DNA of 64,000 nucleotides from Cyanophora paradoxa CCMP329. Its lineage: Eukaryota; Plantae; Glaucophyta. The position numbers and the translations under genes were made by a program. A model generated the notes under the pieces. The model was not told the origin of the DNA. It saw only the letters and a list, made by a program, of their open reading frames with translations, and searched no databases. The DNA is taken from contig QPMI01000420.1 of assembly GCA_004431415.1 (NCBI GenBank), positions 248,001 through 312,000 on the forward strand, read 5' to 3'. Positions within the stretch are counted from its first letter, which is position 1. Each line of letters starts with the position of its first letter. This document shows positions 1-15,929 of this stretch, piece by piece.

Positions 1-162
1 GCTGCAGCCTGCAGCTGTAGCCTAGTAGGAAGCCTCGGAAGAATCCAGCTGCCCATATCTGACGTCGATCGCGACGGTCGTGCATTCGGTGCGGTTCAAC
101 GGTTAAGCCTTAGCTGTCCGACAGTCATCGCCGAAAAGACTTGAACTGCGGAGCACTTCGAA

Positions 163-3100
163 ATGGGCTCGAAGCAATCGACAACTGTCAAGGTCGGCGG
201 AGTTACCGTTGCGAAGGGTGCGTACGCGTCTGCCCGCGCCGCATATGCGCACGCAATGCGTGTGATCGATATCTATATATATCCTGCAAGGCCGCGAGCG
301 CATGCGCAGCGCCCTTAAAACGTGCATGCGCATATATCCTGAGCATCATAGTATACCTGATCCTCGGCGCCTGCAGGCGACCATACGAAGGCGTGCTTCA
401 CGGTACGTCCTGATCATGATTTGCTTCGACCGAGCCTCCAGTATATACACGCATACTTAGCTTCGAAGTAATATATACTGTACCTGCGCAACTTGCGGTG
501 CCACGGTGTGTATAATTAGGCTTGCGGAATCTCGAAGTACGTATACTAGCTATAGTTCGGGCGCCCTTGTAGGCCGAAAGTGCGTGTAGGCGTTAACGTT
601 GCTATACTCATGAGGCCGCCGCTTCTGCGCAGGGGCCGGACTGCACTGGAGACAAAGTTCTCGCGACAGAAGGCATCGGACACGACTTCTGGAAAGCGTG
701 AGTGAAATCGACCCGTATATCATAGTATGTGACAGCCTGGGCCGCGCGAGCTCTCGCTGGGAGCCACCGTGGCGCGGAGAGCGATCGCGAACCCTTACAA
801 TTAAGCTTTCGAAATTTTTCCAAATCTCACGCATGAAGCTTTGTCACATGGCCAGCCGCTTGGAGGTCGACAATCATTGAATTGCTCGAGCTCGGGCTAG
901 GAGTTCGAATTCGATTGTTTCTTTGCCAGAACTGACGTCGACCATGTTTTTCGTTTTGGGTCGAAAAGATGCCAGGGCAACGGACACAAGTCTTTGGGAT
1001 TTCGAATGACATGGGGCGACAACACGAAAGCCTTCTGCTACAATGTGAACAGCTCTGGAGAGGTCGAGTTGCATAAACAGTGAGCCGCGCGATTTCGCCT
1101 CGCACTTATTGCCCATGCAAACGCCTTCGAGGCCGACGCTGGCTTCTGGATCTCGGTTCCGCTCGCGGGAAGGCTGCTGATCTTGATGCAGGGTCCTCTG
1201 GGATTCTGTCCTCGGCGGGGTCACGATCGAGAGGGGTGCGCTCCACACACCGTTTCGGCAGAAAGCTGCCCGCGCCGGCCGCGGGCCGGCGCCCTCACCA
1301 TGCGCATCCTTCGCCCGCAGGTACCGCCACCAAGGCCTGCTTCACGGTGTGTCTCGAGCGCACGTGCTTTCGGCCTCCATAAGCTTGCTTCCTGGCGATC
1401 GCCGGGCCCGGGGGCGTGCGGCCGCGGATTTCAAAAGCTCGCAATTGATAGTCGCGATTGCGCAGGGGCCGAATTGCACCGGAAGCAAAGTTCTTGAAAC
1501 AAATGGCGTGGGCAGCGATTTCTGGAAAGCGTGAGTGATTTCTGGACATTGTGCATACGTATATGCATCATATGCAAGCTTAAGCATACTATGATAAGGC
1601 CGCTTGGGCGCGAAGGCTAAGTAGAACACGCTCTGGAACTTGTATGACGCGCACCGCATCCGGATCATTGAATGGAGTATCAATATAAATGCATATGAAT
1701 GTGATGATTTTGTTTCTAGAGATATTTCTCCTGCCAGCGCTCGCCAGCGTTTTTCTCCTGCCAGCGCTCGCCTGCAGCTGATATCCCTGACTCATTGCAC
1801 ACTGTGACATGACGCTCGGGGCTGCGCAGATGCCAAGCTTCCGGTCATCAATCTGTGGCTGTGCATGTGCCGAAGCCGTGGGATAATGGCGACCGAAGCG
1901 AAGCCAAGTGCTACAATATCAGCACGGCTGACGGCAGCACTGGCGAGGTCGACGCTAATAGAACGTGAGCTGTATTACGTGCACGTGAGTTTAGAACTCG
2001 TAAGCGCACATTGACGCTGATCATGGGGCTGGGCATGGGGTCCGCGCAGTTTGGAATGGATATATCCCGGGTATTGGGATTCCGCCCTCGGCTGGATTGA
2101 GGTCGACAGGGGTGCGTGTGTGAACGAATACGTTAACGCGCATACACACCGTCGCGAATGCCCTCCAGATAGATAATTAATATTATCATCGAACATGCAC
2201 ACGGAATTTCGAATTCGAAGCTTAAGCCTGCGCGCGTGTCTAGATCTAGAACTCGAGTCTCGGACTAACCTTTGGACTGCAGGAAACGACACCATGGCTT
2301 GCTTCAAGGTATGTAATTACTCCCGCCTTCTCCTCTCATCCTGGGCTTCGCTTATCACGGACCCAATCTGGAATGTAATCATGCGTACCCGCGCGCAGGG
2401 GCCGGAATGCACTGGGGAAAAGGTCTACGCCACGGAGTTTGTCGGAGACAATTTTTGGAAAGCGTGAGTGACCCATCGATCCCGAAAAGGATCTGAACGT
2501 GTGGCTGCATGCATATGGCTGCCATTCTTTTCTATGATCACAGTACTTGCTGTCTAGCTATAGAGCTAATTTTTTATAAGTGCAAAGAAAACCAAGATCG
2601 AGAATTCTTCATGCGCCTGCTTGAGCTTTGGCCAATCCCGAGTTCTTTTTTGCCAAAGCTTCTCGCACCTGACTCGAGTTCTTCCTTGGGGTCGCAGTTG
2701 CAATTACAATAATGAGTACAAAAGCATGGCTGTCCGGCAGACGTGGGCCGGAGGAGACAGCACACAAGCAAACTGTTTCAGCGTTACCAGCTCCGGTAAG
2801 GTCGACATCAACAAAACGTGCGCTCCAGGTCTAGATGCGATGTGTTATACCTTTCGATTGCGCGCGCCTAGGCCTCGGAGATGGAGAAATCCAGTTGATA
2901 TAAAAACATTGCAACTCAGTCGAGTGCAGAGGCTGACTTCTGCATATTCGCAATCGCTGCAGCGTGCCTTGGGAGTACAAAGTAGGCGGAGTAGAGATCT
3001 CGAGGGGTGCGCTTGATCTTGGAATTCCGTACGATGTTCGAAGTTTTTCTCGAATTAAATTTCTTCTTTTCCGTATCAGGTAACGACACGAAAGCCTGCT

Positions 3101-4369
3101 GGTCGGTGCGCCGCGGCTGCGGGCTGCAGACGCGTACGGTTTTAATCGAGCTGATATGCAGAAGGAGAATTGCACTGGAGAGAAATTTTTCGAGACAAGC
3201 GGAGTGGGAGCTGATTTCTTCAAAGTGTGAGTGATCATGATCCCGGCCCGGCTGCTTCGGCATGCCCGGCCGCGGTTTCGCAGCCGTACAATGTCGTTGC
3301 AATTGACGATTAGTACTGACTGTGAAGTGCGGTCGTTTAGATGTCACGCCAATGGATATCCGACGGTGGCCACTCAGCTGAAGACCGACGGCACCAAAGC
3401 CAAGTGCTCTCAGATTATTTATAATGGGGAGGAGGAACGTGACCTCGAAACGACGTGAGCCTCGCTTTCTTCGCTTTCGATATAGCCGGTCATTTAATAA
3501 TCGTCTTGACTCGAGCTTCGCTCGAGTGTGATCATATGCATGATGCTGTGAGTGCCGCAGCGTGAGCTGGGAACCACCTCGTGTTGATGTTGGTGGCGTC
3601 TCGGTTTTGAAGGGTGCGCACGCATGCAATTTGCATGCGCTGTCCTACGGTTGCGAAGCTTTCTAATAAACTTCTGCAGGGGATTACAACAAAATCTGCT
3701 ACATGGTGTGTTATATGTAATTACTCGCGTGGTGCTAAAATAATATATCCATTGCCGAATGATTTCGCTATCTTGCTCGCAGGACTCCGACTGCACCGGA
3801 GAGAGTGGTCTTCAAACACTTGGCGTCGGAAATGACTTCTGGAAAGCGTGAGCGCATCTTCAGAATTTGAGCTCGATCGCTATCGCGATTCCTTCTTTCC
3901 AAGAATTGGTCGCCTTGCTTCGACTGAGAGGCAGACTTTATAATTATAAATATGCATGAATGCATATGTGTCTGAAGATTCGCAACTGAATGTCTTCGCG
4001 ACCTGCGCAGATGCCAAGCCAACGGATACAAATCAGCTGCTGTGCAGCAAGCGTGGTGGGCGGGCGACTACTTTAAAGCCGACTGCTTCAATGTGAACAG
4101 CTCCGGCGAGGTCAACGCCAACAAAATGTGAGCCGCGCTAGCGCTGTTTAGCCCTGCATACATTTAAATTAAAGGAATAAATAATGTTTTCGCCATAGCG
4201 CATCATCGATATCGTCGCTTTTAACGTCGCATGTACACGTAGTTTAATATGTACAATCGGCTTGAGAGCGATAAAATCCTTCAATAAAAGAGCTTCGCGC
4301 TCGCGATCGAGCTTTGCTCGAGGCTGATGCATTTCCCGTGATTGTCGCAGCGTGGACTGGGTCGAGTAA
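163..4369 (+). CDS. Multi-exon (~21 exons) protein of five tandem ~85-aa Cys-containing repeats, with N-terminal myristoylation motif; function unknown
   Basis: GT-AG exons splice in frame: MGSKQSTTVKVGGVTVAKG|DHTKACFT|GPDCTGDKVLATEGIGHDFWKA|CQGNGHKSLGFRMTWGDNTKAFCYNVNSSGEVELHKQ|VLWDSVLGGVTIERG|TATKACFT|GPNCTGSKVLETNGVGSDFWKA|... The same four-exon cassette recurs five times and ends ...NANKI|VDWVE* (TAA 4367-4369). Confidence 0.8.
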
Positions 4370-4379
4370 GCACATACAT

Positions 4380-4384
4380 ATATA

Positions 4385-4426
<42 letters not shown>

Positions 4427-4431
4427 TATAT
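4380..4431. repeat. (TA)n microsatellite
   Basis: About 20 TA units directly after the stop of the repeat gene. Confidence 0.95.
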
Positions 4432-4478
4432 CATGTACGACACACGTCGAGGCTGATGTGGCTATCGGTTTGGCGCAG

Positions 4479-4741
4479 CCCGATCGACCCCGATGTTGAT
4501 TATGGGGAGTTGTACGGATACGCAAACGAGCTCGAGGAGGCCCAGGAGGCTACAGAGGCCCTGGCCAACAACGCCGAGGCAAAGCCTTCCTTAAATCATT
4601 TCTTTGTTATTGTCTCGATCGGGCCGGACCGCGCAGGCGTTCGAGGGGGACCTGCAGCTGGAGTGCGAGGACGAGGGGGCGGACACGGCGGAGTGGGCGC
4701 TCGCGCTCGCCGCCGACTCCGAGGCCGCCGATGCTCTGTAG
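4479..4741 (+). pseudogene. Orphan 3' gene fragment (two acidic exons) with no visible 5' part
   Basis: cgcag|PIDPDVDYGELYGYANELEEAQEATEALANNAE|gcaaag...cgcgcag|AFEGDLQLECEDEGADTAEWALALAADSEAADAL* joins in frame. Only the (TA)n tract lies upstream. Confidence 0.4.
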
Positions 4742-5392
4742 CTAGCTGTAGGCCTTGACCTCTAAGGCGGCCGGACGTGCACATTTTGAGCGTACAAGTC
4801 ATTGAATGCCAATGCGCGCACGCGTTAGCACGTGCACACTAGTACTATCCCCCTACGAACTCGATTAAAACCAGATGCCTCCCCCCGCCACAGAGCTAGC
4901 AACAGGCTAGCTCCAAGGCAGCCTCCATAGGACGCCTCCCCGGACGCCTCCATAGGGTGCACGTGGCCACCCGCCCGCACCTGCCCCCCTCCCCGAAGCC
5001 CCCGTCGACCCCCCACAGGGACATTAAATCAGGCGCCCCACACGCAATAAAACACGGGGGCGCGCCCGTGCCATTATATTAGCCCGAGCCCCCCCCTCAC
5101 CTCCCCACCCCCCCTCTAACGACAGCCCCCAAGCTAAGCCCCCAGCGGCTACGACAGCCATATTGCCCTCAAGTAGATGCCACCCCATCAGCAGCCCCAC
5201 AAGAGGAACGCTCATAGTTAGCGACAGCCGATTTCGGCGTCATTCTTCTATATCGCGCTTGCGCGAGTTCGCGAGGGCTTTAATTTTGATTTTGTTCTAG
5301 ATCTAGATCGAGGATCCGAGGGCCGGATCGAGGCCTAGCTATATAGGCCTAGGGGAGCTTCGAAGATCTATGGCTATAGCTAGAGGAGCGAG

Positions 5393-6790
5393 AGCCGAAG
5401 TCTCTCTGCATCGAAGCCGCTGTGAACAACGCTGCTACCCCGAAGCCAGCGCCGCCTTGCCGAGTCGACCCCCCGCGCGCGGCGCCAGTGCAGACGCGCC
5501 CAAACGCCCCGCGGCAGTACCTCGACGCGCTCTCCTCCGCCGCTCATGTGCCGCCGTCCATCTACGGTGCACCCGTCCCTTGCTCGCCATATGCGCTTCT
5601 CAGGCGCTGACCACACCCTGCGCGCCCTCTGCCCATACCCGGCGAGGGAGGGCGCACCCGCCAACACGGACCCCGTGGAAATCAACGCGCATGCCCGCGC
5701 CTTCTTTACGTCTCTCCTCCAGGCAGCACGCCCCCTCCCGCCCCCCTTACGCCCGCCGCCACTGCCGCCCGTGCCGCCGCAGACACACCCGGCACCCAAG
5801 ACAGCCGCCTTGAGTCGCTGGTCACAGGCTTCTTCGCCTGCCGCCTCGGCGAGCTTGATAACGGCCGCCTCGAGTCGCTGGTCACAGGCTTCTTCGCCTG
5901 CCGCCTCGGCGAGCCTGACGACGGCCGCCTCGAGTCGCTGGTCACAGGCTTCTTCGCCTGCCGCCTCGGCGAGCCTGACGATGGCCGCCTTGAGTCGCTG
6001 GTCACAGGCTTCTTCGCCTGCCGCCTCGGCGAGCCTGCTTCCACAAGCCCCCCCCCCCCCCCCGCGACTCGGGGGCAGGGTACGAGATGCCCGTACGCCT
6101 CCCCCCCTCCTCCCCCACCCCCCGCCGCCACCGCCGCGCCGCGCCCCGCCGCCGCCGCCGCCGCCGCCGCCGCCCCGCGCCCGCCGCCGCCGCCTCGCAC
6201 CCCGCCGTCCCCGCCGCGCGCCCTGCCGCCGCTGCCGCGCACCCCGCCGCCGCCGCCGTGCACGATCCCGAGGCCGCCGGCGAGGACAAAGCCGGTGGCG
6301 GTGAGGCCACCGGCGAGGACGATGCCGGTGGCGAGGACGAGGCCGGCGGCGCGGATGCCACCGGGGCAGACGCCGACGCCACCCCGTAGATCCCTCTTCA
6401 GTGGCCGCTCCCCTCCCAATAGTGCCCTCTTCCCACCCCGCTCCCTGCCTCCTTTTCTCCCTTCGCAGCCTCGCTCTCTCCTCTCTCCCTCCCCCCTCAG
6501 GTCCACCTCTCCCTACATACCCGATCTTCCGCTACCCCCCCGCCCCCTCCGCCCCCCCCTCAATACTGCAACCTCATGACCGCAACCACCTCCCCCCTCC
6601 AAATCCACCCACCCGCATCTGTACCTTCGTGGCCCGCACCTACCTGTAGCTACTGTAGTACTCGCTCTTAGGCTCCACAGCACCCTTAGCATGTCCACAG
6701 TCCGTCCTTTGTGGCCCCCCAGCGGGGATATACGCGGGGCTGGCCTAACCAATATACTGATATGCCCTCGGGGCTTTTCCTAAAAAAAAA
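5393..6790 (+). mobile_element. Non-autonomous or 5'-truncated non-LTR retroposon with poly(A) tail and 15-bp target-site duplication
   Basis: AGCTAGAGGAGCGAG at 5378-5392 and again at 6790-6804, the second directly after A9 (6782-6790). No RT or endonuclease motifs recognised inside. Confidence 0.8.
5801..6037. repeat. 60-bp tandem repeat, ~4 copies, inside the retroposon
   Basis: GCCGCCTYGAGTCGCTGGTCACAGGCTTCTTCGCCTGCCGCCTCGGCGAGC recurs every 60 bp; in-frame reading TAASSRWSQASSPAASASL. Confidence 0.95.
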
Positions 6791-7249
6791 GCTAGAGGAG
6801 CGAGGGGACTCCGGGAGGAAATTCTAGATCTTGACGTGTACGTATACGTGCGATTCTTGGGCCGGGGCTGAGCTCCAGTACTCTTGAGTACTGATTATGA
6901 GCGGCCAGAGTCCGCCCCCCCCCCCCCCCACCCCCCCCCCCCCACCCCACCCCCCCCCCACCCCCCGGCCGCCCCCGGGCTCTCAGATCTAGACTGAGCT
7001 CGAGTCTATAGCTAGCTGCACAGCTAGAGCCTGCAACGTATCACAAGCAAAAGTGATAATCTACCTGAAAAAGAGATCTAGAGATCCAGATCCGATTCTA
7101 AAGTACCTGAGTAAGCTGAAGCCTACAGCTAGCTGCGCTGCTGCACTGCTAGAGCCTGCCAGTTGAAATTCTGTCAAACGTATCATAAGGAAAGGCGATA
7201 ACCTACCTCAAAAAGAGAGATCCAGAACATCAAAGCTTAAAATGCGGCG

Positions 7250-10105
7250 CTACTCGCCGCGGGAAAGGGGCCGGGGCCGGGGCCGGGGCCGGCGCGCCGG
7301 GGGCAGCGCGGAGGCGGGCACGCGCCAGACCTCCATGCCGCACCGCTCGCTCCACACCTGTCCGCACCTCTGCTTGTTTCTGTGCGGGGACGGGACGGGG
7401 CGGGGCGGGGGCACCTTCACGGCGGGGACCGAGCCCTCGTGGATCGCCTGCCTTAGGCCCGTGCGGGACATCTCAAGGGCCTCCGCCGCCCGACCCAGCG
7501 ACACCGTTCCCTCGCCGGAGGACCGTTCGTCCAAGGCGCGAGGGCGCGACGCGGCGCCGGGCCGTGCTCCCTGCGCCCCCCGCTGGCCGCGCAGCTGCTC
7601 CACCGCCGACCGCGGCACGCGCCACTCCCGCCGGCGCCGCCGGAACGCGGGCGGCGCCTGCGCCGCGTGAGAAGGGCGCCCCGCGCACGACCCGCCGATC
7701 TCCTCGGCGCTCACCTGAATCTCGGCCCCCGGGGCCGCGGGGGGGTACTGCTCCGCCTCAAGCTCCCCGTGCGCGATCATCGAGTGGACCGCCGAGGCCC
7801 GTACCCCCAGAAGGGACGCTGCCCCCCTCTACAAAAACGCTGAGAAGGAGGACGGTAGGCAAGGGTTAGGGGGCGGGGAAGTCGCACCACGGTGAGGTAC
7901 CCCCCCTGGTCCTCGTCTCCTCCCCCCTCCTGTACGGACATCTGGGCCAGCGTCTGGGCGTCTTCCTCCCGGATCCACCTGCGGGCCGCACAGGCACGCG
8001 CGTGAGTCTCGAAAGAGGGCGTAGACGGGAAGAGGGGCGGGCAGGGGTTGGGCGCGCCACCCGCCGACGCCGCCCCGCCCCGAGCGCTTCTCCCCGCGGA
8101 CGAGCCCCTCCTTGACCCAACGCGCCAGCGTCCCCGTGCCCCGGCCCAGCCTGCCGCGCGAGCGACGCGGTCAGAGCGCGAGGGGCCCCCCGGGGGTGCA
8201 CGAACGAACGGGCGGGGAGCTCGGGCGGGGCGCACCGGGCGGCGACGGCGCGGAGGGGTACGAGGGAGTCGAGCTCGCGCCCGCGGCGCTCCTGGAAGGC
8301 CAGGAGGTCGTCCGGCCGCACGCGCCACGCCGGCCGCCCGCGCCCGCCCAGCCGCCGGCGCGACGCCGGCACCTCCCCGGACTGCACCAGGCGGAACAGC
8401 GTGTCCCTGTGTATCCCCTGCGAGCGGACCGAAACGTTGGGGGGGGGGGGGACGGGATCGGGGGGGGGGGGTACGCGGCACCAGCCGCTCGGCGGCCTCG
8501 TCCAGCGTCAGGGCGATGCCGTCGGCCGCCGTCTCCTGCGGGGCGTTCGGGGGGTACAGCAACCCGCCGGAGGGGGGTACGCCGCACCAGCGAGCACTCC
8601 AGGGCCTCGGGACCGCAGGCCTCGTCCTGACGCGCGGGGATCCGGTAAGACCCTACCCGGGGGTATCGGATATCGGGGCGGGGGGTACGCCAGCTACCCG
8701 CATCGCGCCGAGGGCTGCCTCGTGGACCGAGTCCTCCCACGCGAACCAAACGGCCTCTTTCGCCCCCACGCACTGCGCCGCGGTACCCGTCAGGTTACTT
8801 CGGGGGACAGAAAGGTGCCGGGGGTACGGCGCACCATGACGCCTTCGAGGGCGCCGGACTCGAGGCGGGCGCAGACCTCCTCGGGGGGTACGCCGAGGCG
8901 GTGCGATGCCTCCTCCACCTTCGCGGGAGGGTACAGGGTCGGCCGCAGTGGCGGCGCGGTTGGTTCGGCGCGGACCGAGATGAGCCGTGGGGCCGGCCGG
9001 GGCGCCGCCTCCGTCCCCGCCTCGTCCTCGTCCTCGGAGACCAGGGAGAGGGACCCCAGGCCGTCCGCGGACTTGACTCCGATCATCTGCGTGGCGAAAG
9101 TCAAGATCGACGAGGGGGCCCTGCGGGGAGGGGTACGGTGGCGCCGGACCTTGACGCGCATGCTCTCGCGCGCGAGGTACGCCTCGAACGTGACGTCGTC
9201 GTCGACGAGAAACTCGCGCTCGTCCTCGTACCCGGCGGGCGGCGGGCGGCGCTCCAGCACAGCGGCCAGCGCGTGCGAGCGCTTCCGGCGCGAGCGGAGT
9301 GCTCCTGCGGCGGGCGGGCGGCGGCCGCGGCGCGTGAGGAGCGCCTCGAACGAAGCGAAGGGCTAATACGCTCACCGATGCCGTAGCGGTACCTGAGCAG
9401 GCGCGGCGAGGCCCGTCAGGAAGGAACGAAGCGAGCAAGAAAGCAAGGGCCGGGGCGCGCGCTCACGCGAAGCTCTCGTCATTCAGATCCACGACCTCGT
9501 CGTCCACGCCTCCGTAGCCGTAGCCGTAGCCATAGCGGTTCCGCCGCGCCGCCTCCCGCATCTCGCGGAGCCGCGTCCGCACGAACGCCGCCTCTGGGGC
9601 GCCGGCAGCGGTCAGCTCTGGGACGGAGGCGGGGCGTGCGGCCGCCGGCCGCCTCACCGGAATCGCCGCTCGACGAAGAATCATCGTTGCTTCGCGCCTG
9701 CTGGACCAGCTGCCGCGGCCCGACGAGCTTGAGCCGCCCCTTCTGCAAATCTAGATCATGGCCGCAATCCTCGGGGGCCTTCTGCTCTCCGCCGCCGCTG
9801 ACGACTTCCCTGGCGCTCTGAACTACTTCTTGCGGGCGTTTCGGAGTGCTCGCCTCCAGGACGCGGGCCGCCGCCGGCTCAGCGAGGTTGAACGGCTGTG
9901 CGTACGCAAACCGTATCCGGGGCCGCCGCGGCCGGACGGGCAGCGAACGCGGTCGGAGCTCCCGGAGCGCGTCTGTCCTACGAAAAGACGGCGAGATGCG
10001 CGGCAGCGGGGTTTCCGGCCGCCAGGACGACGCGACACCGCCGTCGTGACCGGTCGGCGGCGGGGACGGGGCGGAGAACGCCGCCGTACCGTGCCCGGAA
10101 CCCAT
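7250..10105 (-). CDS. Intron-rich gene encoding five tandem excisionase-type (HTH_17 / MerR-like winged HTH) DNA-binding domains after a long low-complexity N-terminus
   Basis: Spliced domains: ISVEEASHRLGVPPEEVCARLESGALEGVMCVGAKEAVWFAWEDSV; LTLDEAAERLGIHRDTLFRLVQSGEVPASRRRLGGRGRPAWRVRPDDLLAF; VPLRAVAARLGRGTGTLARWVKEGLVRGEKRSGG...WIREEDA; YLTVEGAASLLGVRASAVHSMIAHGELEAEQ...EWRVPRSAVEQL; VSLGRAAEALEMSRTGLRQAIHEGSVPAVKVWSERCGMEVWRVPASAL. Each fits the HTH_17 pattern LTxxEAAxxLGVxxxTLxRxxxxGxLPAx(n)WRVxxxDL. First ATG at 10105, TAG at 7250. Confidence 0.8.
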
Positions 10106-10287: not shown

Positions 10288-13200
10288 ATGGCGCGGCACG
10301 ACGGCGTTACCTGCGACGGCTGCGGCGCTGCTCCCATCGTCGGCGTGAGGTGGAAGTGCGCGAGTTGTGCTGACTTTGGTGCGTATGCGACGTCTCCGCC
10401 CCCGCTTGTGCCCTCCTTTGCTTCGAGTCGGCTGACGTCGACGTCGACGTGTCTGTCAGACCTTTGCGGCACCTGCGAAGCAGCGGGCCGGCGCTGCCCG
10501 GATCCCACTCAGACGCACGCCTTCGTCAAGGTCAACTACGCTACGTCGCTGCCGTCGCCACTCGTTCCGAACGGGCTGCCGCCTCGGACCGCGCACGCCG
10601 GCGCCCCCGACGAGCACGAGGGCATCCGTGAGCCGAGCCGCCCGGTCCTCTTTCTCCTCGCTGCGCCACGGCCGTGACGCACGGCGCCGCGCCCCGCCGC
10701 AGGCTGCGACGGGTGCGGCGCCAATCCGCTCCGCGGCACCCGCTTCAAGTGCATGGCCTGCCAGGACTTCGACCTCTGCTTCACGTGCGAGTTCGGCGGT
10801 CGCGCCGGCCACGACGCCTCGCACCCCTTCCTGCGCATGCCGTACCCCATCCCCATCGCGAACAACTTCCCCGGACCCCTCTCCGCCTCTTCCCCTCCGC
10901 CTCCCCCGAACTTCCCCTTCGGCACTGCCCCGCGCGGCGTTTTCGGCATGACTACACCCGTCCCCCCATCTCCCGCCGCTCCTGCCGTGGTAGCCCCCTT
11001 CGGCCTCTTCTCAAAGGCCGACGAGAAGCCGGTACCCCTCGTGGAAGTCGCCGCCGTGGGCACCATCCGCGGTACGCGTACCCCGCCACGTCGCCGTCGT
11101 CGCGCGCTGATGTACCCCCCTCCCGCGCAGACGCCACGGCGCGCATCGCCATCCGCCAGCGCTACATGAACGTCGAAAAGGTGCCGCCCGGATTCGAGCC
11201 CGTCGATCGAGGCGGCCCTCTTGCGCTCCTCTCACCCGCCGGCGGCGCGCCGTACCCCACTCGCGCAGGTCCCGATCGAGGCGACGTACAAGTTCCCCCT
11301 CGAGGAGGGCGCCGCCCTCGTCGGCTTCTCCGTCGAGGTCCGCGTACCCCCCTCCCCCACCCTACCCCCTACTCACCTCGCCTCCCGCGTCCAGGCCGGG
11401 GGCCGGCGGTTCGAGGGGACGGTGAAGGAGAAGGAGAAGGCCTTCGAGACGTACAGCCAGGCAATCGCCGGCGGCCACGGTCCGCCCGCCCGCCCGCCCG
11501 CTGCACCTAGGGCCCGCTGAAGCTTCCAGCGAGCGAGCGAGCGCCCCGGGCACATTCTGCGGCACCGGCGCCCCCCGCGCCGCTTCTCCTCCAAGGCGGC
11601 TGACGGCCGCCCCCCCGCGCCGCAGGGGGGTACCTTGTCGAGGAGGAGCAGGTGCCGCCCCCCCCCGCCGGCTTCGGGCTCGCCCCCGAGGCCGAGGCCG
11701 AGCCGAGGCGCGCCCCCGCCCCCGCTCCCCCGCCCGCGCAGCCGGACGTCTTCACGTTGAGCGTGGGGAACCTTCCTCCGGGCGGCCACGCCGTCGTCGA
11801 GGCGAGCCCCCAGCGCCTTCCGCCCCTGCCCCCGCCCCCGCCCCCGCACAACGCTAGCTTAACAAATGAGCTCCTCCTAACAAAGCTCTGGAACCGCTCG
11901 CGTCTGACGAGCGCCCCGCGCCCCCTCCGCCAGATCGTCTTCGTGAGCATCCTGGAGCAGCGCCCGGACGGCTCCGCCGCCCTCCGCCTCCCGACGGCCC
12001 TCTGCCCCAAGTACAGCCCCCTCGCCGCCGGGCCCGAGGGCGCACCGCACCTCAACCCGGGCGTCGTCCTCCCCGACGTCCCGTACCGCCTCCAGGTCCG
12101 AACTCGAAGAAGACGATAGATGATCCAGAAGCGATGGATAAGATCATGGATAGCTACGATAGATAGATAGATAGATGCCGAGGTGGCACCTGGGACGGGA
12201 CCCGGCGGGATTCTGACCCGTGGCCCGCCCTCACCGCCCGCAGCTCTCGCTAGAGGTGCACTCGGCGGCGCGGGTGGCGGCGGTGACGTCCCCCACCCAC
12301 GGGCCCGAGCTGCGCGTCGAGCTGCCCCCCGCCGGCGCCGGGCCCGCCCGCGTCGAGCTCAAGCGCGCCCCTACCACCCCCCCACCCCCCTACCCCCTAA
12401 TCCCTTACCCCCCCCACCAGGCGGCCCGTGGCGCTGGACGGGGACGTGGTGCTCGAGTTCGCGTACGGGGAGCCCTCCGCCCCCCGCGCCCTCTTCGAGC
12501 GGGTCCGCTCCCTGCGCCGCCCCTCCTCACCCCCTAGCTCCTAGCCCCTAGCTCTTTCCCGCCGGATTCAGCTTAACACATTGCCGGCTTGAGAGCTATG
12601 CCCGTCTCTCCCGTCTCCGCGCCGCTCTGACAGGCCGGCCCCACAACCTCCGCCCGCGCCCCCGCCCGCTGCAGAGCGACAAGGCGGCGGCCGCCATGGT
12701 CGCCTGGTGCGCCCCCTCCCTCCCCTTCCCCCTCCCCCTCCCCTTCCCCCGCCCCCTCCCCCCCCCTGGCCTCACCGCCTTTAGGTTCCCCGCCTGGACG
12801 GAGGAGGACGAGCTGGAGCGCGCCGAGTTCGTCCTCGTCATCGACCGATCGGGCTCCATGGGCGGTGCGCCCGCCGCTGGGGGGGGGGGGGGGGGGGGGG
12901 GAGCGCCCGGAAGGGAGCCCGGGGCCCAGCGGGGCTCCTAGCAGCCGCCTAGACACCAGAATCCCCAGGAGCAGGAGAGCGTTCCTCTAGCTCTGGAGGG
13001 CGGTCGGCCCCGCGTTGCGATCCCAGGCGCCTCGCGCGGGGCGGGGCCAAGGTCTGACAGGGCGCGGCCGCGGCCGCCTGCAGGGTCGAAGATCGAGCAG
13101 ACGAAGAACGCGGCGCAGCTGCTGCTGCGCTCGCTGCCCGTCGGCGCCCGCTTCAACATCGTCGGCTTCGGATCCACCTTCCAGGCCCGCCCCGCCCCGT

Positions 13201-15929
13201 CCCGCCCCGCTCCCCCTTCTAGCCCTCCTCTTCTTCTCACCGCCTCGCGCAGTTCCTCTTCGAGCGCTCGGCGGACTACTCGCAGGAGACCCTCGACCGC
13301 GCCTCCCAGGTCCGCGCTCGCCCCCAGGCCGGAGCCGGAGCCGGCGCCGCCGCTAAAGGGCCGGCAGCACGTGGCCGGCATCGGGGCCGACCTCGGCGGC
13401 ACCGAGATCCTCGAGCCCCTCCGCGTGCGTACCCCCCCCTGGTCGCCCCAGCAGGCGGGGCCGATCCGGGGTACCCCCGCAGGAGCTCTTCGAGAACCGG
13501 CCCCCGGAGCAGGCGTACCCCCGCCAGGTCTTCATCCTCACCGACGGCGAGGTGCGAACGAAATAAGCCGGGGGGGGTACAGCGGAGCTTCGAGTCGAGA
13601 GCTAAACGCCCCCGGCAGGTGTCGAACACGCAGCAGGTGGTGGACCTCGTCCGCCGGCACGGCGACCGCTGCCGCGTCTTCGCGTTCGGTGCGCGCGCAC
13701 GTACCTCCCTCGAGCTTTCGCGTCCCGTACCCCCCGCCGACCTCCTCCCGCCGCAGGCATCGGGGCCGGGGCGAGCTCGCACCTTGTGAAGAGCGTGGCG
13801 CGGGCCGGCGGGGGCGAGGCGGTGTTCATTTCGGACGGGGAGCGCATCGAGGGGCCCGTGCTCGCCCAGCTCGCCCGCGCCATGCAGGCGCGCGCACCGC
13901 CTCTCTTCTTTCTCTTAAGCTTGCATCTGCCCGCCTTCGCTGACCTGCCGTCCGTCTGTCTGCTGCGCAGCCTGTGGTCGCCGGCGTGCGCGTCGACTGG
14001 GGCCCGGCGGCGCCCCACGTCGCCGTCACGCCGCACGTACCCCCGCCCGTCTTCAAGGTACCCCCTTCCATTCGTTTCGGGTCCCCGGAGGCTCCAAGCT
14101 GAGCCCTTCGATCCCCCCGCAGGGCGACCGGCTTGTTTCGTACGCGGTGACCCGCCCCGGAGTCGACCCGGCGTCCGTCCAGTGGCCGCGTGAGGTCACG
14201 CTCCACGTCTCCACCTCCTCCGGCGACCGCACCTTCGCCGTACCCCTCCCCGCCGCCCCGGCGGAGGGCGCACAGGTCCAGCAGCTCGCCGGCCGCTCCC
14301 TCATCCGGGTACGCCCTCCCCCGCCCTTTCTTCCGGTACCCCCCCGTAACACCGTACCCCGGCAGGACCTGGAGTCGGGCCGGAGCCCGATGCACGACGG
14401 GCGGGGCCAGCTCCTCGAGGGGCGTACCCAGGAGCAGCTCGACGCCGAGGCGCGCCCCGTACCCCCGCCCGCTCTCCCCCGCACCGACCGACCGCCCCGG
14501 CCGGCCCAGGTGGTCAAGACGGCGCTGGCCTACGGGCTGGCCTCCCGCCTCACGAGCTTCGTGGCGGTGGAGCGGCGCGAGGGCGGCGCCGCGGAGGCCC
14601 CCATGGAGTCCCGCTGCGTCCCCGTCGCCGAGATCCGCAGGGTGCCCGCCCCGCGCCCTCCAAGAAGATCTAGAGCTCGCTGCGCCTTCTTATAACATAC
14701 GGCCTTCCGAAGCTCTTCTTAGATCTAGCTATAGAGCTCGCTGTTAACGTTCCTTTTCAAGAGCGCGATATATTCTATGGTCCTCACGATCACGACCGAA
14801 ATCAAAGCGCGCCCGCTGATCGCGAGCCCGGCCCGGCCCGCAGCACGTGGCGCCGCAGGCGCCGCCTATGCCGATGATGATGTGCGGCATGGCCTTCGGA
14901 GCGCCGATCGCCCTCTCGTCGGCCCCGGTCATGGCCTGCGCCTCCGCGCCCCCGCCCGTCTTCCGCGCCGCCGCCGGCCCCCGCGCCCTCCGCGGCGCCC
15001 CGGCCCCGGCCCCCGCCATGGCGATGGCATTCGGGGCGGCGCCAGCGGCGCCCGGCGGCGGCGGCGGCGTGGGCGCGGCCACGGGCGGGCGCGGCGGCAA
15101 GGGCGGCTTCCTGGGAGCCCTCGGGGGCCTGTTCGGCGCCGAGAAGGCGAAGAAGAAGAGCGCCGTGCGCCCGCCCCCGCCCCGCCCGCTCCGCCAAATT
15201 TAAATCGAGCGCTTCCCCGTCGAAGAGATCAAATCTTTGATTTTGGGCTCACTGGGGCGCAGCCGCAGAGGGAGGCGGCGGACGTGATGGAGCTTGAGTG
15301 CGACGAAGCGGGCGCCGACGCCTTCGCCAACGCCGCGCCCATGCCGCCGCCGCCGCCGCCTGCGCCGATGCCGCCCTGCCCCATGCCCGCCGCGGCCCCG
15401 GTGCCTGCGCCTGGGTTCTCGGCGGCGGGGCCGCTGCAGGCGTCGCGGGCGGCGCGGCCGCTGGACCGGCTGGTGCTGCTGCAGGCGGTGGACGGCTCGT
15501 GGGGCCTCAGCGCCGCCCTCGCCGACGCCCTCGGCACGCCCCTCGACGTCCTCTCCGCAGCCTGCCCCCCCGCCCTCCGGCCCGCCCCCCCTTCCTTCCG
15601 CTCGTTTGCTTTAATTTCGCTTGATTCTGACGCGCTCGCGCCGCAGCGGAGGGACGGGCGCCGCGCTCTGGGCCACCGCGCTCGCCGTCGCCTTCCTCGT
15701 CGCCAAATGCGCCGAGTGCGCCCCAACAGAAAATATTATCGTTGAATGAACTCAAAGTTCCTCGCGCAGCGCGAAGGCGGAGTGGGCGCTGCTGGAGAAG
15801 AAGGCGCGGCGCTGGCTGCGGGGCGCCCTGGGCCCCCGCCTGCCCCTCGCGCTCCCCGGGGCCGCCCCCGCCGCGGAGGCGGCCGCCGCCTGCGACGCCC
15901 TCGTCCTCGCCGCCGCCGCCGCCCTCTGA
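10288..15929 (+). CDS. ZZ zinc finger x2 + VIT + von Willebrand A domain protein (VWA5A-like)
   Basis: ZZ1 HDGVTCDGCGAAPIVGVRWKCASCADFDLCGTC; ZZ2 CDGCGANPLRGTRFKCMACQDFDLCFTC; VIT PIEATYKFPLEEGAALVGF...KEKEKAFETYSQAIAGGHG...DVFTLSVGNLPPG; vWA MIDAS FVLVIDRSGSMGG, GGTEILEPL, QVFILTDGEV, RVFAFGIGAGAS; C-terminal LVLLQAVDGSW / LWATALAVAFL / EWALLEKKARRWL typical of VWA5A. Confidence 0.92.

What the first reader, a model, noticed from the sequence alone, without database searches (positions are those of the whole stretch)
7250..10105. Eukaryotic, intron-split protein with five tandem phage/bacterial excisionase-type HTH domains
Seen: five HTH_17-like units appear only after splicing, with introns inside the domains, so the gene is fully domesticated and not a bacterial contaminant. 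Established: this winged-HTH family (lambda Xis-like excisionases, Streptomyces BldC, MerR-type DNA-binding domain) is predominantly prokaryotic, and Xis/BldC bind direct repeats as cooperative head-to-tail filaments. Inference: a five-domain fusion would be a pre-assembled filament reading a long or tandem DNA site. The N-terminus (MGSGHGTAAFSAPSP..., S/P/R-rich for ~70 aa) loosely resembles a plastid transit peptide with an early Phe. That would make it a candidate nucleus-encoded organellar nucleoid, recombination or transcription factor acquired by EGT/HGT. I know of no described eukaryotic protein with this architecture.
Basis: partly seen in the sequence, partly recalled or inferred. Interest (0 to 1): 0.8.

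Follow-up and report, generated by a model that had tools for sequence, protein, structure and literature searches.

The report
Five-fold excisionase-type HTH protein, Cyanophora
This is a real, intron-rich nuclear gene of the alga Cyanophora paradoxa whose protein strings five bacterial or phage "excisionase-type" DNA-binding domains in a row, a layout not described in eukaryotes; where in the cell it acts is still open.

Summary
The minus strand at 7250-10105 carries a 15-exon, 645-codon gene. All 14 introns are GT-AG and 52-85 nt long. It matches codon for codon the public Cyanophora paradoxa model tig00020572_g11576.t1 (EukProt).

The C-terminal 360 residues hold five MerR/Xis/BldC-type winged-HTH units:
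- Whole-protein scores: Pfam HTH_17 81.6 bits (cut-off 27); TIGR01764 73.8 bits (cut-off 28.8).
- Foldseek matches to BldC, RacA and mycobacteriophage Xis: TM 0.6-0.8.
- A decayed sixth unit lies between units 1 and 3.
- Eight introns cut the units, and splicing restores them.

Two units pass Pfam's cut-off alone. Two more are clear by profile. Unit 4 rests mainly on a structure model.

No relative was found beyond the domain level in any collection or in the papers searched. The scan has, however, already reported a six-unit paralogue elsewhere in this genome (s1-511133). I also found an eight-unit array on a phage-like, prokaryote-type metagenome contig, so tandem arrays are not confined to eukaryotes.

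An exon-plus-intron duplication suggests the array grew inside the algal genome.

The transit-peptide reading is weakly supported: Phe at position 10 and prolines at 13-17 fit published cyanelle criteria, but the protein is absent from one cyanelle proteome. EGT versus HGT cannot be resolved. No RNA reads could be obtained.

The parts
7250..10105 (-). Whole coding region, 15 exons, 645 codons plus TAG. Exons: 10105-9658, 9593-9467, 9392-9376, 9304-9150, 9086-8976, 8918-8835, 8772-8698, 8626-8588, 8535-8482, 8417-8236, 8150-8061, 7978-7888, 7828-7715, 7657-7415, 7357-7250.
   Evidence: Public model P0001 (EukProt tig00020572_g11576.t1) maps with 645 of 645 codons identical. All 14 introns are GT-AG, 52-85 nt.
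9896..10105 (-). First 70 residues, a transit-peptide-like start. The first 20 residues are uncharged, with Phe at position 10 and Pro at 13, 15, 16 and 17. An Arg-rich stretch follows (residues 29-65).
   Evidence: Sequence. Criteria from PMC4510345: Phe within the first 10 residues and prolines at 10-20. No localisation data. Not found in that paper's cyanelle proteome tables.
8988..10105 (-). N-terminal half (residues 1-282) with no recognised domain. It is low-complexity, with a Tyr/Gly repeat, acidic patches and a basic cluster at residues 201-208.
   Evidence: No Pfam family at E<=10 for residues 1-280. Sequence.
9376..9392 (-). 17-nt micro-exon (exon 3).
   Evidence: Needed to reproduce residues 193-198 of P0001. 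Flanked by AG and GT.
8725..8987 (-). Unit 1 (residues 283-330), a winged HTH cut by introns 5 and 6.
   Evidence: Leave-one-out profile 22.5 bits, 0 of 500 shuffles as high. A profile built only from the metagenome protein's units hits residues 285-313. The AF2 single-sequence model gives strand-helix-helix at pLDDT about 61-80. No Pfam HTH_17 hit on its own.
8588..8724 (-). Vestigial unit 2 (residues 331-352), a decayed copy of the first half of unit 1 with no wing. It contains intron 7.
   Evidence: The DNA alignment of the U1 and U2 segments runs through the exon end into the following intron. No family hit. Low pLDDT.
8280..8520 (-). Unit 3 (residues 358-416), the best-preserved HTH_17 unit, cut by intron 9 between helix 1 and the turn. 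Its wing carries an Arg/Gly-rich insertion with an AT-hook-like G-R-G-R-P.
   Evidence: Pfam HTH_17 52.3 bits. TIGR01764 38.2 bits. AF2 pLDDT 76-81.
7936..8267 (-). Unit 4 (residues 421-475), the most diverged unit, cut by introns 10 and 11.
   Evidence: Pfam HTH_17 only 12.1 bits. Leave-one-out 5.5 bits, 6 of 500 shuffles as high. AF2 with the unit alignment gives pLDDT 79.6 and a strand-helix-helix-hairpin-helix fold. Foldseek: BldC TM 0.72-0.78, rmsd 1.8 A, and RacA.
7586..7905 (-). Unit 5 (residues 486-553), cut by introns 12 and 13, with a 17-residue longer wing loop.
   Evidence: Pfam HTH_17 29.1 bits. TIGR01764 28.0 bits. Leave-one-out 20.4 bits.
7298..7513 (-). Unit 6 (residues 578-630), cut by intron 14 at the helix-wing boundary.
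   Evidence: Pfam HTH_17 18.0 bits, E 0.0035. Leave-one-out 38.6 bits. The metagenome-unit profile gives 24.5 bits. AF2 pLDDT 78-85 with a hairpin wing.
8773..8834 (-). Intron 6 (62 nt), homologous to intron 8.
   Evidence: Best-scoring pair among all 91 intron pairs, z 5.9, alignable over about 40 nt from the donor. Both introns follow homologous exon ends.
8536..8587 (-). Intron 8 (52 nt), homologous to intron 6.
7253..7297 (-). C-terminal Pro/Arg tail, encoded by a GGGGCC-type microsatellite.

Best explanation
A genuine nuclear gene of Cyanophora paradoxa encodes a 645-residue multivalent DNA-binding protein. An unstructured N-terminal half of about 280 residues is followed by five covalently linked MerR/Xis/BldC-type winged helix-turn-helix units, plus one decayed unit. 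The units are joined by short flexible linkers of about 5 to 25 residues.

By analogy with solved relatives (inferred, not shown), each unit should put its second helix into a major groove. Its wing, here lengthened by Arg/Gly-rich insertions, should contact the neighbouring minor groove. Five tethered units would then occupy a run of adjacent sites and coat and bend the DNA. That would be a covalent version of the head-to-tail arrays that monomeric BldC and Xis form on direct repeats. The protein would therefore act as an architectural protein or regulator, not as a recombination enzyme.

At least part of the array grew by tandem duplication of exon plus intron inside the algal genome.

The compartment is open. 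My odds are about 40% muroplast (cyanelle), about 45% nucleus, and the rest elsewhere.
For: Shown:
- Exact 15-exon model with canonical introns.
- Family membership above curated cut-offs: HTH_17 81.6 bits, TIGR01764 73.8 bits, PHROG 66 E 3e-18.
- A profile search of the PDB puts mycobacteriophage Xis Gp37 first (E 7.7e-9), then Rv2175c, RacA and BldC.
- The five units share one secondary-structure pattern in a single-sequence model.
- The U4 model matches BldC, RacA and Xis bound to DNA at TM 0.6-0.8.
- Every unit has a longer wing loop than the eight units of the metagenome protein.
- Introns 6 and 8 and the exon ends before them are homologous.

Established knowledge:
- BldC and Xis bind direct repeats head-to-tail and distort DNA, and the wing sits in an AT-rich minor groove (PMC5859096).

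Context:
- No recombinase or transposase domain was found in the flanking ORFs tested, and the neighbour is a ZZ zinc-finger gene.
Against: - No DNA-binding, localisation or expression data.
- Three of the five units are below Pfam's cut-off on their own.
- U4 is weak by sequence (p about 0.01), and its good model was made with an alignment of HTH units, which leans towards that fold.
- The relative placement of the domains in the array model carries no information (pTM 0.31).
- Classical MerR proteins bind palindromes as dimers, so a head-to-tail mode is not a given.
Confidence: 0.6

Rival explanations
1. One reading: the protein is imported into the muroplast (cyanelle). There it organises, recombines or regulates plastid DNA. 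It descends from the cyanobacterial endosymbiont or from another bacterial or phage donor.
For: - Phe at position 10 in an uncharged start, prolines at 13-17 and then an Arg-rich stretch match the modular cyanelle transit peptide described in PMC4510345. There, 49 of 77 transit peptides have Phe in the first 10 residues, and 145 of 187 have it within 1-18.
- The DNA-binding domain is of bacterial type.
- The paralogue reported by the scan is also said to start like an import signal (s1-511133, unchecked AI note).
- The Arg/Gly wings and an AT-hook-like G-R-G-R-P in U3 would suit AT-rich DNA. The plastid genome is AT-rich and the nuclear genome about 65-75% G+C (plastid value from memory; nuclear).
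Against: - 13 of 53 proteins outside the cyanelle set also carry an early Phe, so the signal is weak.
- The transit-peptide starts shown from that paper's table have Phe at positions 3-7, whereas here it is at the limit, position 10.
- Six internal peptides and the first ten residues of the protein are absent from that paper's cyanelle proteome tables, which do contain the nucleus-encoded HU protein. That set holds only 262 proteins.
- Pro/Arg/Ser-rich text is generic in this G+C-rich gene; the C-terminal tail is alike.
- No cyanobacterial or other donor could be identified.
Confidence: 0.4
2. It is a nuclear, lineage-specific transcription factor or chromatin protein built from a captured bacterial or phage DNA-binding domain. 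Several eukaryotic lineages have recruited such domains in this way.
For: - The long disordered N-terminal half carries acidic patches and a basic cluster (residues 201-208) of the kind seen in activation domains and nuclear localisation signals (sequence).
- A second basic run lies in the U5 wing.
- The head-to-head arrangement with a ZZ zinc-finger gene is ordinary nuclear gene context.
- Precedent for phage-derived DNA-binding domains in eukaryotic factors is from my own knowledge (for example KilA-N in APSES factors). MBP1 appears only as a weak Foldseek row (rank 30).
Against: - No predicted localisation could be computed.
- The start of the protein does meet the cyanelle transit-peptide criteria.
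- Motif-level NLS calls are unreliable in Arg-rich proteins.
Confidence: 0.45
3. It is part of, or recently derived from, a mobile element or viral insertion: a true recombination directionality factor working with a nearby integrase or transposase.
For: The family's best-known members are phage and ICE excisionases. The genome is reported by this scan to hold many mobile elements (unchecked notes).
Against: - No recombinase or transposase family in the flanking ORFs tested.
- No other HTH_17 match anywhere in the 64-kb window.
- Fourteen spliceosomal introns, host-like composition and a single-member protein cluster.
- No match in 50,697 phage records.
Confidence: 0.05
4. It is an annotation artefact or a decaying pseudogene whose apparent domains are stitched together by an optimistic gene model.
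For: - No RNA evidence could be obtained here.
- No exact product was on record in the assembly collection.
- Four introns (57, 57, 57 and 63 nt) are in frame and stop-free, so their removal is not forced by the frame.
Against: - Ten of the 14 introns must be removed to keep the frame.
- Splicing completes the domains (U3 rises from 28.0 to 52.3 bits).
- All junctions are GT-AG and the reading frame is intact for 645 codons with GC3 0.89.
Confidence: 0.04

Closest known systems
BldC of Streptomyces (MerR-like, about 68 residues; PDB 6ama, 6amk)
   Same: Same winged-HTH fold: the U4 model gives TM 0.72-0.80 and rmsd 1.8-2.0 A. Like BldC, the units lack the coiled-coil and effector domains of classical MerR proteins. 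BldC works as several units side by side on DNA (PMC5859096).
   Different: BldC is a single-domain monomer that assembles non-covalently on direct repeats. Here five units are fused in one chain behind a 280-residue tail, and the wings carry Arg/Gly-rich insertions. The host is eukaryotic and the gene has introns. The DNA-binding mode is untested.
Phage and ICE excisionases / recombination directionality factors (lambda Xis, mycobacteriophage Pukovnik Xis Gp37 4j2n, RdfS; Pfam HTH_17, TIGR01764)
   Same: Sequence family membership above the curated cut-offs. Gp37 is the best PDB sequence match (E 7.7e-9). Fold match TM about 0.7.
   Different: No partner recombinase nearby and no mobile-element context. 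It is multidomain rather than about 50-80 residues.
RacA chromosome-anchoring protein of Bacillus subtilis (5i44)
   Same: Top Foldseek match of the U4 model (E 5e-3, TM about 0.65). It is an architectural, non-transcriptional use of the same domain.
   Different: RacA has one wHTH plus a coiled coil that multimerises. There is no sequence relationship beyond the domain.
Eight-unit HTH_17 array P0003 (563 residues, metagenome contig from run ERR10166134)
   Same: The only other long tandem array found. Pfam HTH_17 scores 194.6 bits over 8 stretches. The arrays align unit to unit.
   Different: It sits on a 3.2-kb contig among small overlapping genes, a phage-like context. It has no introns and short canonical wings. 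Identity to the algal units is only 17-32%. No relative was found in phage records or GTDB genomes.
Six-unit paralogue in the same genome (scan finding s1-511133; 1012 residues, 14 exons, AT-hooks)
   Different: I could not retrieve its sequence. None of the searches run with this protein returned any second Cyanophora protein, so the two are related only at the domain level.
TraN of Enterococcus plasmid pIP501 (4p0y, 4pm3)
   Same: A single chain with two excisionase/MerR-like wHTH modules. It appears among the Foldseek rows for the array model.
   Different: Two units only, in a bacterial conjugation setting. The match is weak (TM about 0.37).

Membership tests
Pfam HTH_17 (PF12728) / NCBIfam TIGR01764 excisionase-family DNA-binding domain | Profile score above the curated cut-off | tested here: met
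   Whole protein: HTH_17 81.6 bits against 27, TIGR01764 73.8 bits against 28.8. Per unit: U3 52.3 and U5 29.1 pass. U6 18.0, U4 12.1 and U1 (no hit) do not pass alone.
Pfam HTH_17 (PF12728) / NCBIfam TIGR01764 excisionase-family DNA-binding domain | MerR-like winged-helix fold: strand, two helices, beta-hairpin wing | tested here: met
   The single-sequence model shows the strand-helix-helix core in all five units, with a hairpin wing in U3 and U6. The U4 model has pLDDT 79.6 and matches BldC, RacA and Xis at TM 0.6-0.8. Caveat: the U4 alignment consisted of HTH units.
Pfam HTH_17 (PF12728) / NCBIfam TIGR01764 excisionase-family DNA-binding domain | Binds double-stranded DNA | not testable with these tools
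   Needs EMSA, DAP-seq or ChIP.
Recombination directionality factor (true excisionase) | Encoded with a partner tyrosine or serine recombinase in a mobile element | tested here: not met
   No recombinase or transposase family in the flanking ORFs scanned. The neighbour is a ZZ zinc-finger gene. No other HTH_17 match in the window. Only ORFs of about 120 residues or more were scanned, so short exons could be missed.
BldC family | Small single-domain monomer that oligomerises head-to-tail on direct repeats | tested here: not met
   The domains are fused in one 645-residue chain. The fold matches, but the binding mode could not be tested.
Cyanelle (muroplast) transit peptide of Cyanophora | Phe within the first 10 residues of an uncharged, hydrophobic start | tested here: met
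   Phe is at position 10 and there is no charged residue before position 21. Criterion from PMC4510345. It has low specificity: 13 of 53 proteins outside the cyanelle set also qualify.
Cyanelle (muroplast) transit peptide of Cyanophora | Prolines at positions 10-20 separating the N-terminal module | tested here: met
   Pro at 13, 15, 16 and 17. Criterion.
Cyanelle (muroplast) transit peptide of Cyanophora | Protein detected in isolated cyanelles | tested here: not met
   The first ten residues and six internal peptides of the protein are absent from the three supplementary tables of PMC4510345. That data set is shallow (262 proteins), so this is weak negative evidence.

The most novel reading that the evidence does not exclude
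Glaucophytes keep a small private family of proteins in which bacterial Xis/BldC-type winged-HTH units are fused into a ready-made DNA-coating array. These proteins are imported into the muroplast to organise or regulate its AT-rich genome. That would be a class of plastid nucleoid protein with no counterpart in red or green plastids.
Probability: 0.25. Interest if true: 0.75.

Novelty: new variant of a known kind. Interest (0 to 1): 0.55.

Why it matters
The domain itself is very well known in bacteria and phages. The new points are its presence in a spliced eukaryotic gene, its five-fold covalent repetition, and the DNA-level sign that the array expanded inside the host genome.

If the protein acts in the muroplast, it would add a bacterial-type DNA-organising factor to the most cyanobacterium-like of plastids. 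It would also bear on how plastid nucleoids were remodelled after endosymbiosis.

If it is nuclear, it is another example of a lineage-specific regulator built from a captured prokaryotic domain.

In either case it is a natural single-chain version of the BldC/Xis nucleoprotein filament. It could show how tethering changes site length and cooperativity.

The value is limited by the lack of any orthologue outside Cyanophora, and by the absence of expression, localisation or binding data.

Tried and rejected
Exon pieces were searched by reference. After that I used the public protein P0001, which a tool returned, and checked it codon by codon against the window.
- Word-index protein searches: three searches returned only the protein itself. 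They used residues 270-645, a two-protein profile, and residues 355-478 at E<=10.
- Exhaustive HMMER: with the last 192 codons it gave only P0001, an unrelated repeat protein (P0002) and the eight-unit protein P0003.
- ESM Atlas: no usable hit.
- tblastn against 50,697 phage records: no match for either array.
P0003 and P0001 found no relative in GTDB genomes or JGI metagenomes.
- The look-up of encoding contigs: no exact record of P0001.
- Unit tree: unresolved, no starred branch, and U1 and U4 on very long branches. No donor or order of duplications can be read from it.
- Plain tblastn of P0001 against the window without composition correction gave only low-complexity noise elsewhere. A profile scan of all six frames found HTH units only in this gene.
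- Pfam on bacterial-style ORFs of the neighbouring gene found nothing except the ZZ finger. They were probably wrong frames or split exons.
- I first considered that the recurring GTACCCCC might be the true donor site. That frame breaks the HTH units, so I rejected it.
Full report
**What is there**

The region is 69-74% G+C, like the neighbouring 10 kb. Reading the minus strand in three frames showed pieces of a repeated helix-turn-helix motif. The pieces were spread over all three frames and separated by short GT...AG intervals. Exon pieces searched by reference already reached Pfam's cut-off for HTH_17: window:7869-8507:- gave 28.0 bits and window:7253-7828:- gave 31.9 bits, against a cut-off of 27.

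An exhaustive HMMER search with the last exon-containing piece returned three proteins. One was a 645-residue protein, P0001. The collection labels it EukProt EP00741 Cyanophora paradoxa, tig00020572_g11576.t1. That agrees with what earlier notes of this scan say about the genome.

P0001 maps onto the window in 15 exons between 10105 and 7250. All 645 codons are identical and the stop is TAG. All 14 introns begin with GT, end with AG and measure 52-85 nt. There is a 17-nt micro-exon. CDS GC3 is 0.89 and intron G+C is 0.74. The finding's coordinates are exactly the CDS limits.

The start codon lies 182 bp from the start of a divergently oriented gene that opens with a ZZ zinc finger (39.6 bits). 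This is ordinary eukaryotic nuclear DNA, not a contaminant.

**The domains**

Whole-protein scores for P0001:
- Pfam HTH_17: 81.6 bits
- NCBIfam TIGR01764 'excise': 73.8 bits against a cut-off of 28.8
- PHROG 66 'excisionase and transcriptional regulator': E 3e-18

Scores for each unit:

| Unit | Residues | Pfam HTH_17 alone | Leave-one-out profile, shuffles as high out of 500 |
|---|---|---|---|
| U1 | 283-330 | no hit | 22.5 bits, 0 |
| U3 | 358-416 | 52.3 bits | 29.4 bits, 0 |
| U4 | 421-475 | 12.1 bits | 5.5 bits, 6 |
| U5 | 486-553 | 29.1 bits | 20.4 bits, 0 |
| U6 | 578-630 | 18.0 bits | 38.6 bits, 0 |

The leave-one-out profiles were built from the other units plus eight units of the metagenome protein P0003. 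A profile made only from the P0003 units finds U1, U3, U5 and U6.

A single-sequence AlphaFold model of residues 270-645 gives each of the five units the same strand-helix-helix core at pLDDT about 65-85. A hairpin wing is modelled in U3 and U6. The linkers are disordered.

With the unit alignment, U4 folds at pLDDT 79.6. Its best structural matches are RacA-DNA, BldC-DNA (TM 0.72-0.80, rmsd 1.8-2.0 A), Pukovnik Xis and MerR N-terminal domains. That alignment leans towards the fold.

A sequence profile of the units finds Pukovnik Xis Gp37 first in the PDB (E 7.7e-9), then Rv2175c, RacA and BldC.

The count of five is therefore right: four units are firm and U4 is probable.

Between U1 and U3 lies a 22-residue remnant (331-352). 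It is a decayed copy of the first half of U1.

Compared with the P0003 units, every algal unit has a wing loop longer by 4 to 17 residues and rich in Arg and Gly. U3's loop includes an AT-hook-like G-R-G-R-P.

**Introns and how the array grew**

Eight introns fall inside the five units. Splicing extends the U3 match from profile positions 12-50 (28.0 bits) to 2-50 (52.3 bits). It also recreates the first strand of U1 and U5.

Intron positions are partly shared:
- The helix-wing boundary is cut at the same alignment column and phase in U1 and U6.
- The U3/U4 and U1/U5 N-terminal introns lie within one or two codons of each other.

The clearest case is U1 and the vestigial U2. Their DNA aligns through the exon end and about 40 nt into the following introns (introns 6 and 8). 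These two are also the most similar of all 91 intron pairs (z 5.9). I read this as tandem duplication of exon plus intron, meaning growth of the array inside the algal genome after introns were present. The statistic is modest, and the composition is extreme.

**Relatives**

No orthologue or close relative was found:
- Three word-index searches returned only the protein itself.
- The exhaustive search gave no second Cyanophora or other eukaryotic protein.
- The Atlas gave nothing usable.
- Phage records, 185,579 prokaryotic species genomes and JGI metagenomes gave no match.
- Full-text searches found no paper linking Cyanophora and excisionase, and no description of a eukaryotic HTH_17 protein.

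Two things qualify the claim of uniqueness:
- The scan has already followed up a six-unit, 1012-residue paralogue on other DNA of this genome (s1-511133). I could not fetch its sequence. None of my searches returned it, so the two share only the domain type.
- The exhaustive search returned P0003, a 563-residue protein with eight tandem HTH_17 units (194.6 bits). It sits on a 3.2-kb metagenome contig among small overlapping genes, a phage-like context.

Tandem arrays of this domain therefore exist outside eukaryotes. The algal array could in principle descend from such an array.

A tree of the 13 units is an unresolved star with long algal branches. No donor and no EGT-versus-HGT call can be made.

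**How it probably works**

BldC and Xis are monomeric members of this fold. They bind direct repeats head-to-tail, coat and bend DNA, and place the wing in an AT-rich minor groove (PMC5859096). RdfS is a further example (PMC11963761).

Five such units tethered by 5-25-residue linkers are most simply read as a multivalent DNA binder. It would occupy a run of adjacent sites and act as an architectural or regulatory protein. This is inference; nothing here tests binding.

No recombinase is nearby, so a true excisionase role is unlikely.

**Where it acts**

Points for the muroplast:
- Köhler et al. 2015 (PMC4510345) describe cyanelle transit peptides as having Phe within the first 10 residues (49 of 77; 145 of 187 within 1-18) and prolines at 10-20.
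- This protein has an uncharged start, Phe10, Pro13/15/16/17 and then an Arg-rich stretch, so it meets those criteria.

Points against, or that weaken the case:
- 13 of 53 proteins outside the cyanelle set in that study also had an early Phe.
- The transit-peptide starts shown from that paper's table carry Phe at positions 3-7.
- The protein's first ten residues and six internal peptides are absent from that paper's proteome tables, which do include the nucleus-encoded HU protein.
- The 280-residue low-complexity N-terminal half, with acidic patches and a basic cluster, would equally suit a nuclear regulator.

I put the muroplast at about 40% and the nucleus at about 45%.

**Limits**

- Four introns are in frame and stop-free, and could be retained in some transcripts.
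- The domain arrangement in the array model carries no information (pTM 0.31).

**Verdict**

This is a new variant of a known kind: a known prokaryotic DNA-binding domain in a novel covalent five-fold array within a spliced glaucophyte gene. It is one of at least two such genes in this genome. Interest is moderate. The gene is well defined, and its function is testable but unknown.

Noticed in passing
window 7741-8891 (mostly minus strand) and 11112-14466 (mostly plus strand): The 8-mer GTACCCCC occurs 27 times in the window against 1.7 expected. Of these, 21 lie in the two head-to-head genes, mostly on the sense strand of each. In the HTH gene a GTACCCC core sits 8-14 nt into introns 4, 6, 7, 8 and 9 (after GTGCSSC in introns 6, 8 and 9), and again 12-30 nt before some acceptors. 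It also occurs in exons, coding Val/Tyr-Pro-Pro. It could be a shared intron element, a splicing signal or a local duplication history; this is unexplained.
   Followed up: partly
window 10288-10677 (+), continuing to about 14500: The divergent neighbour gene starts 182 bp from this gene's ATG and opens with a ZZ-type zinc finger (Pfam 39.6 bits). The rest of its exons were not modelled, and bacterial-style ORFs gave no family. The two genes may share a bidirectional promoter.
   Followed up: partly
L001:696-2387 (metagenome contig ERR10166134_110715): P0003 is a 563-residue protein with eight tandem HTH_17 units, flanked by small overlapping genes. It has no relative in phage records or GTDB genomes. 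I did not search the literature for prokaryote-type tandem excisionase-domain arrays of this kind.
   Followed up: partly
window 9149-9087, 8975-8919, 7714-7658, 7414-7358 (minus strand): Four introns of 63, 57, 57 and 57 nt are multiples of three with no in-frame stop. Retaining them would only insert 19-21 residues, three of them within or beside HTH units. They could give alternative isoforms.
   Followed up: no
window 9376-9392 (minus strand): A 17-nt micro-exon encodes a Tyr/Gly-rich snippet that echoes the Tyr-Gly repeat at the end of exon 2.
   Followed up: no
window 6902-6981 and 6992-7218: Just 3' of the stop codon there are two features. One is an interrupted poly-C tract of about 70 nt. 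The other is two copies of an AT-richer segment of about 85-110 nt, 117-142 nt apart (42-nt core 86% identical). They may be 3' UTR or terminator-region repeats.
   Followed up: partly
window 1-7000: This stretch has lower G+C (50-60%) than the rest of the window. Its long ORFs match no Pfam family. It may be intergenic or repeat DNA.
   Followed up: partly
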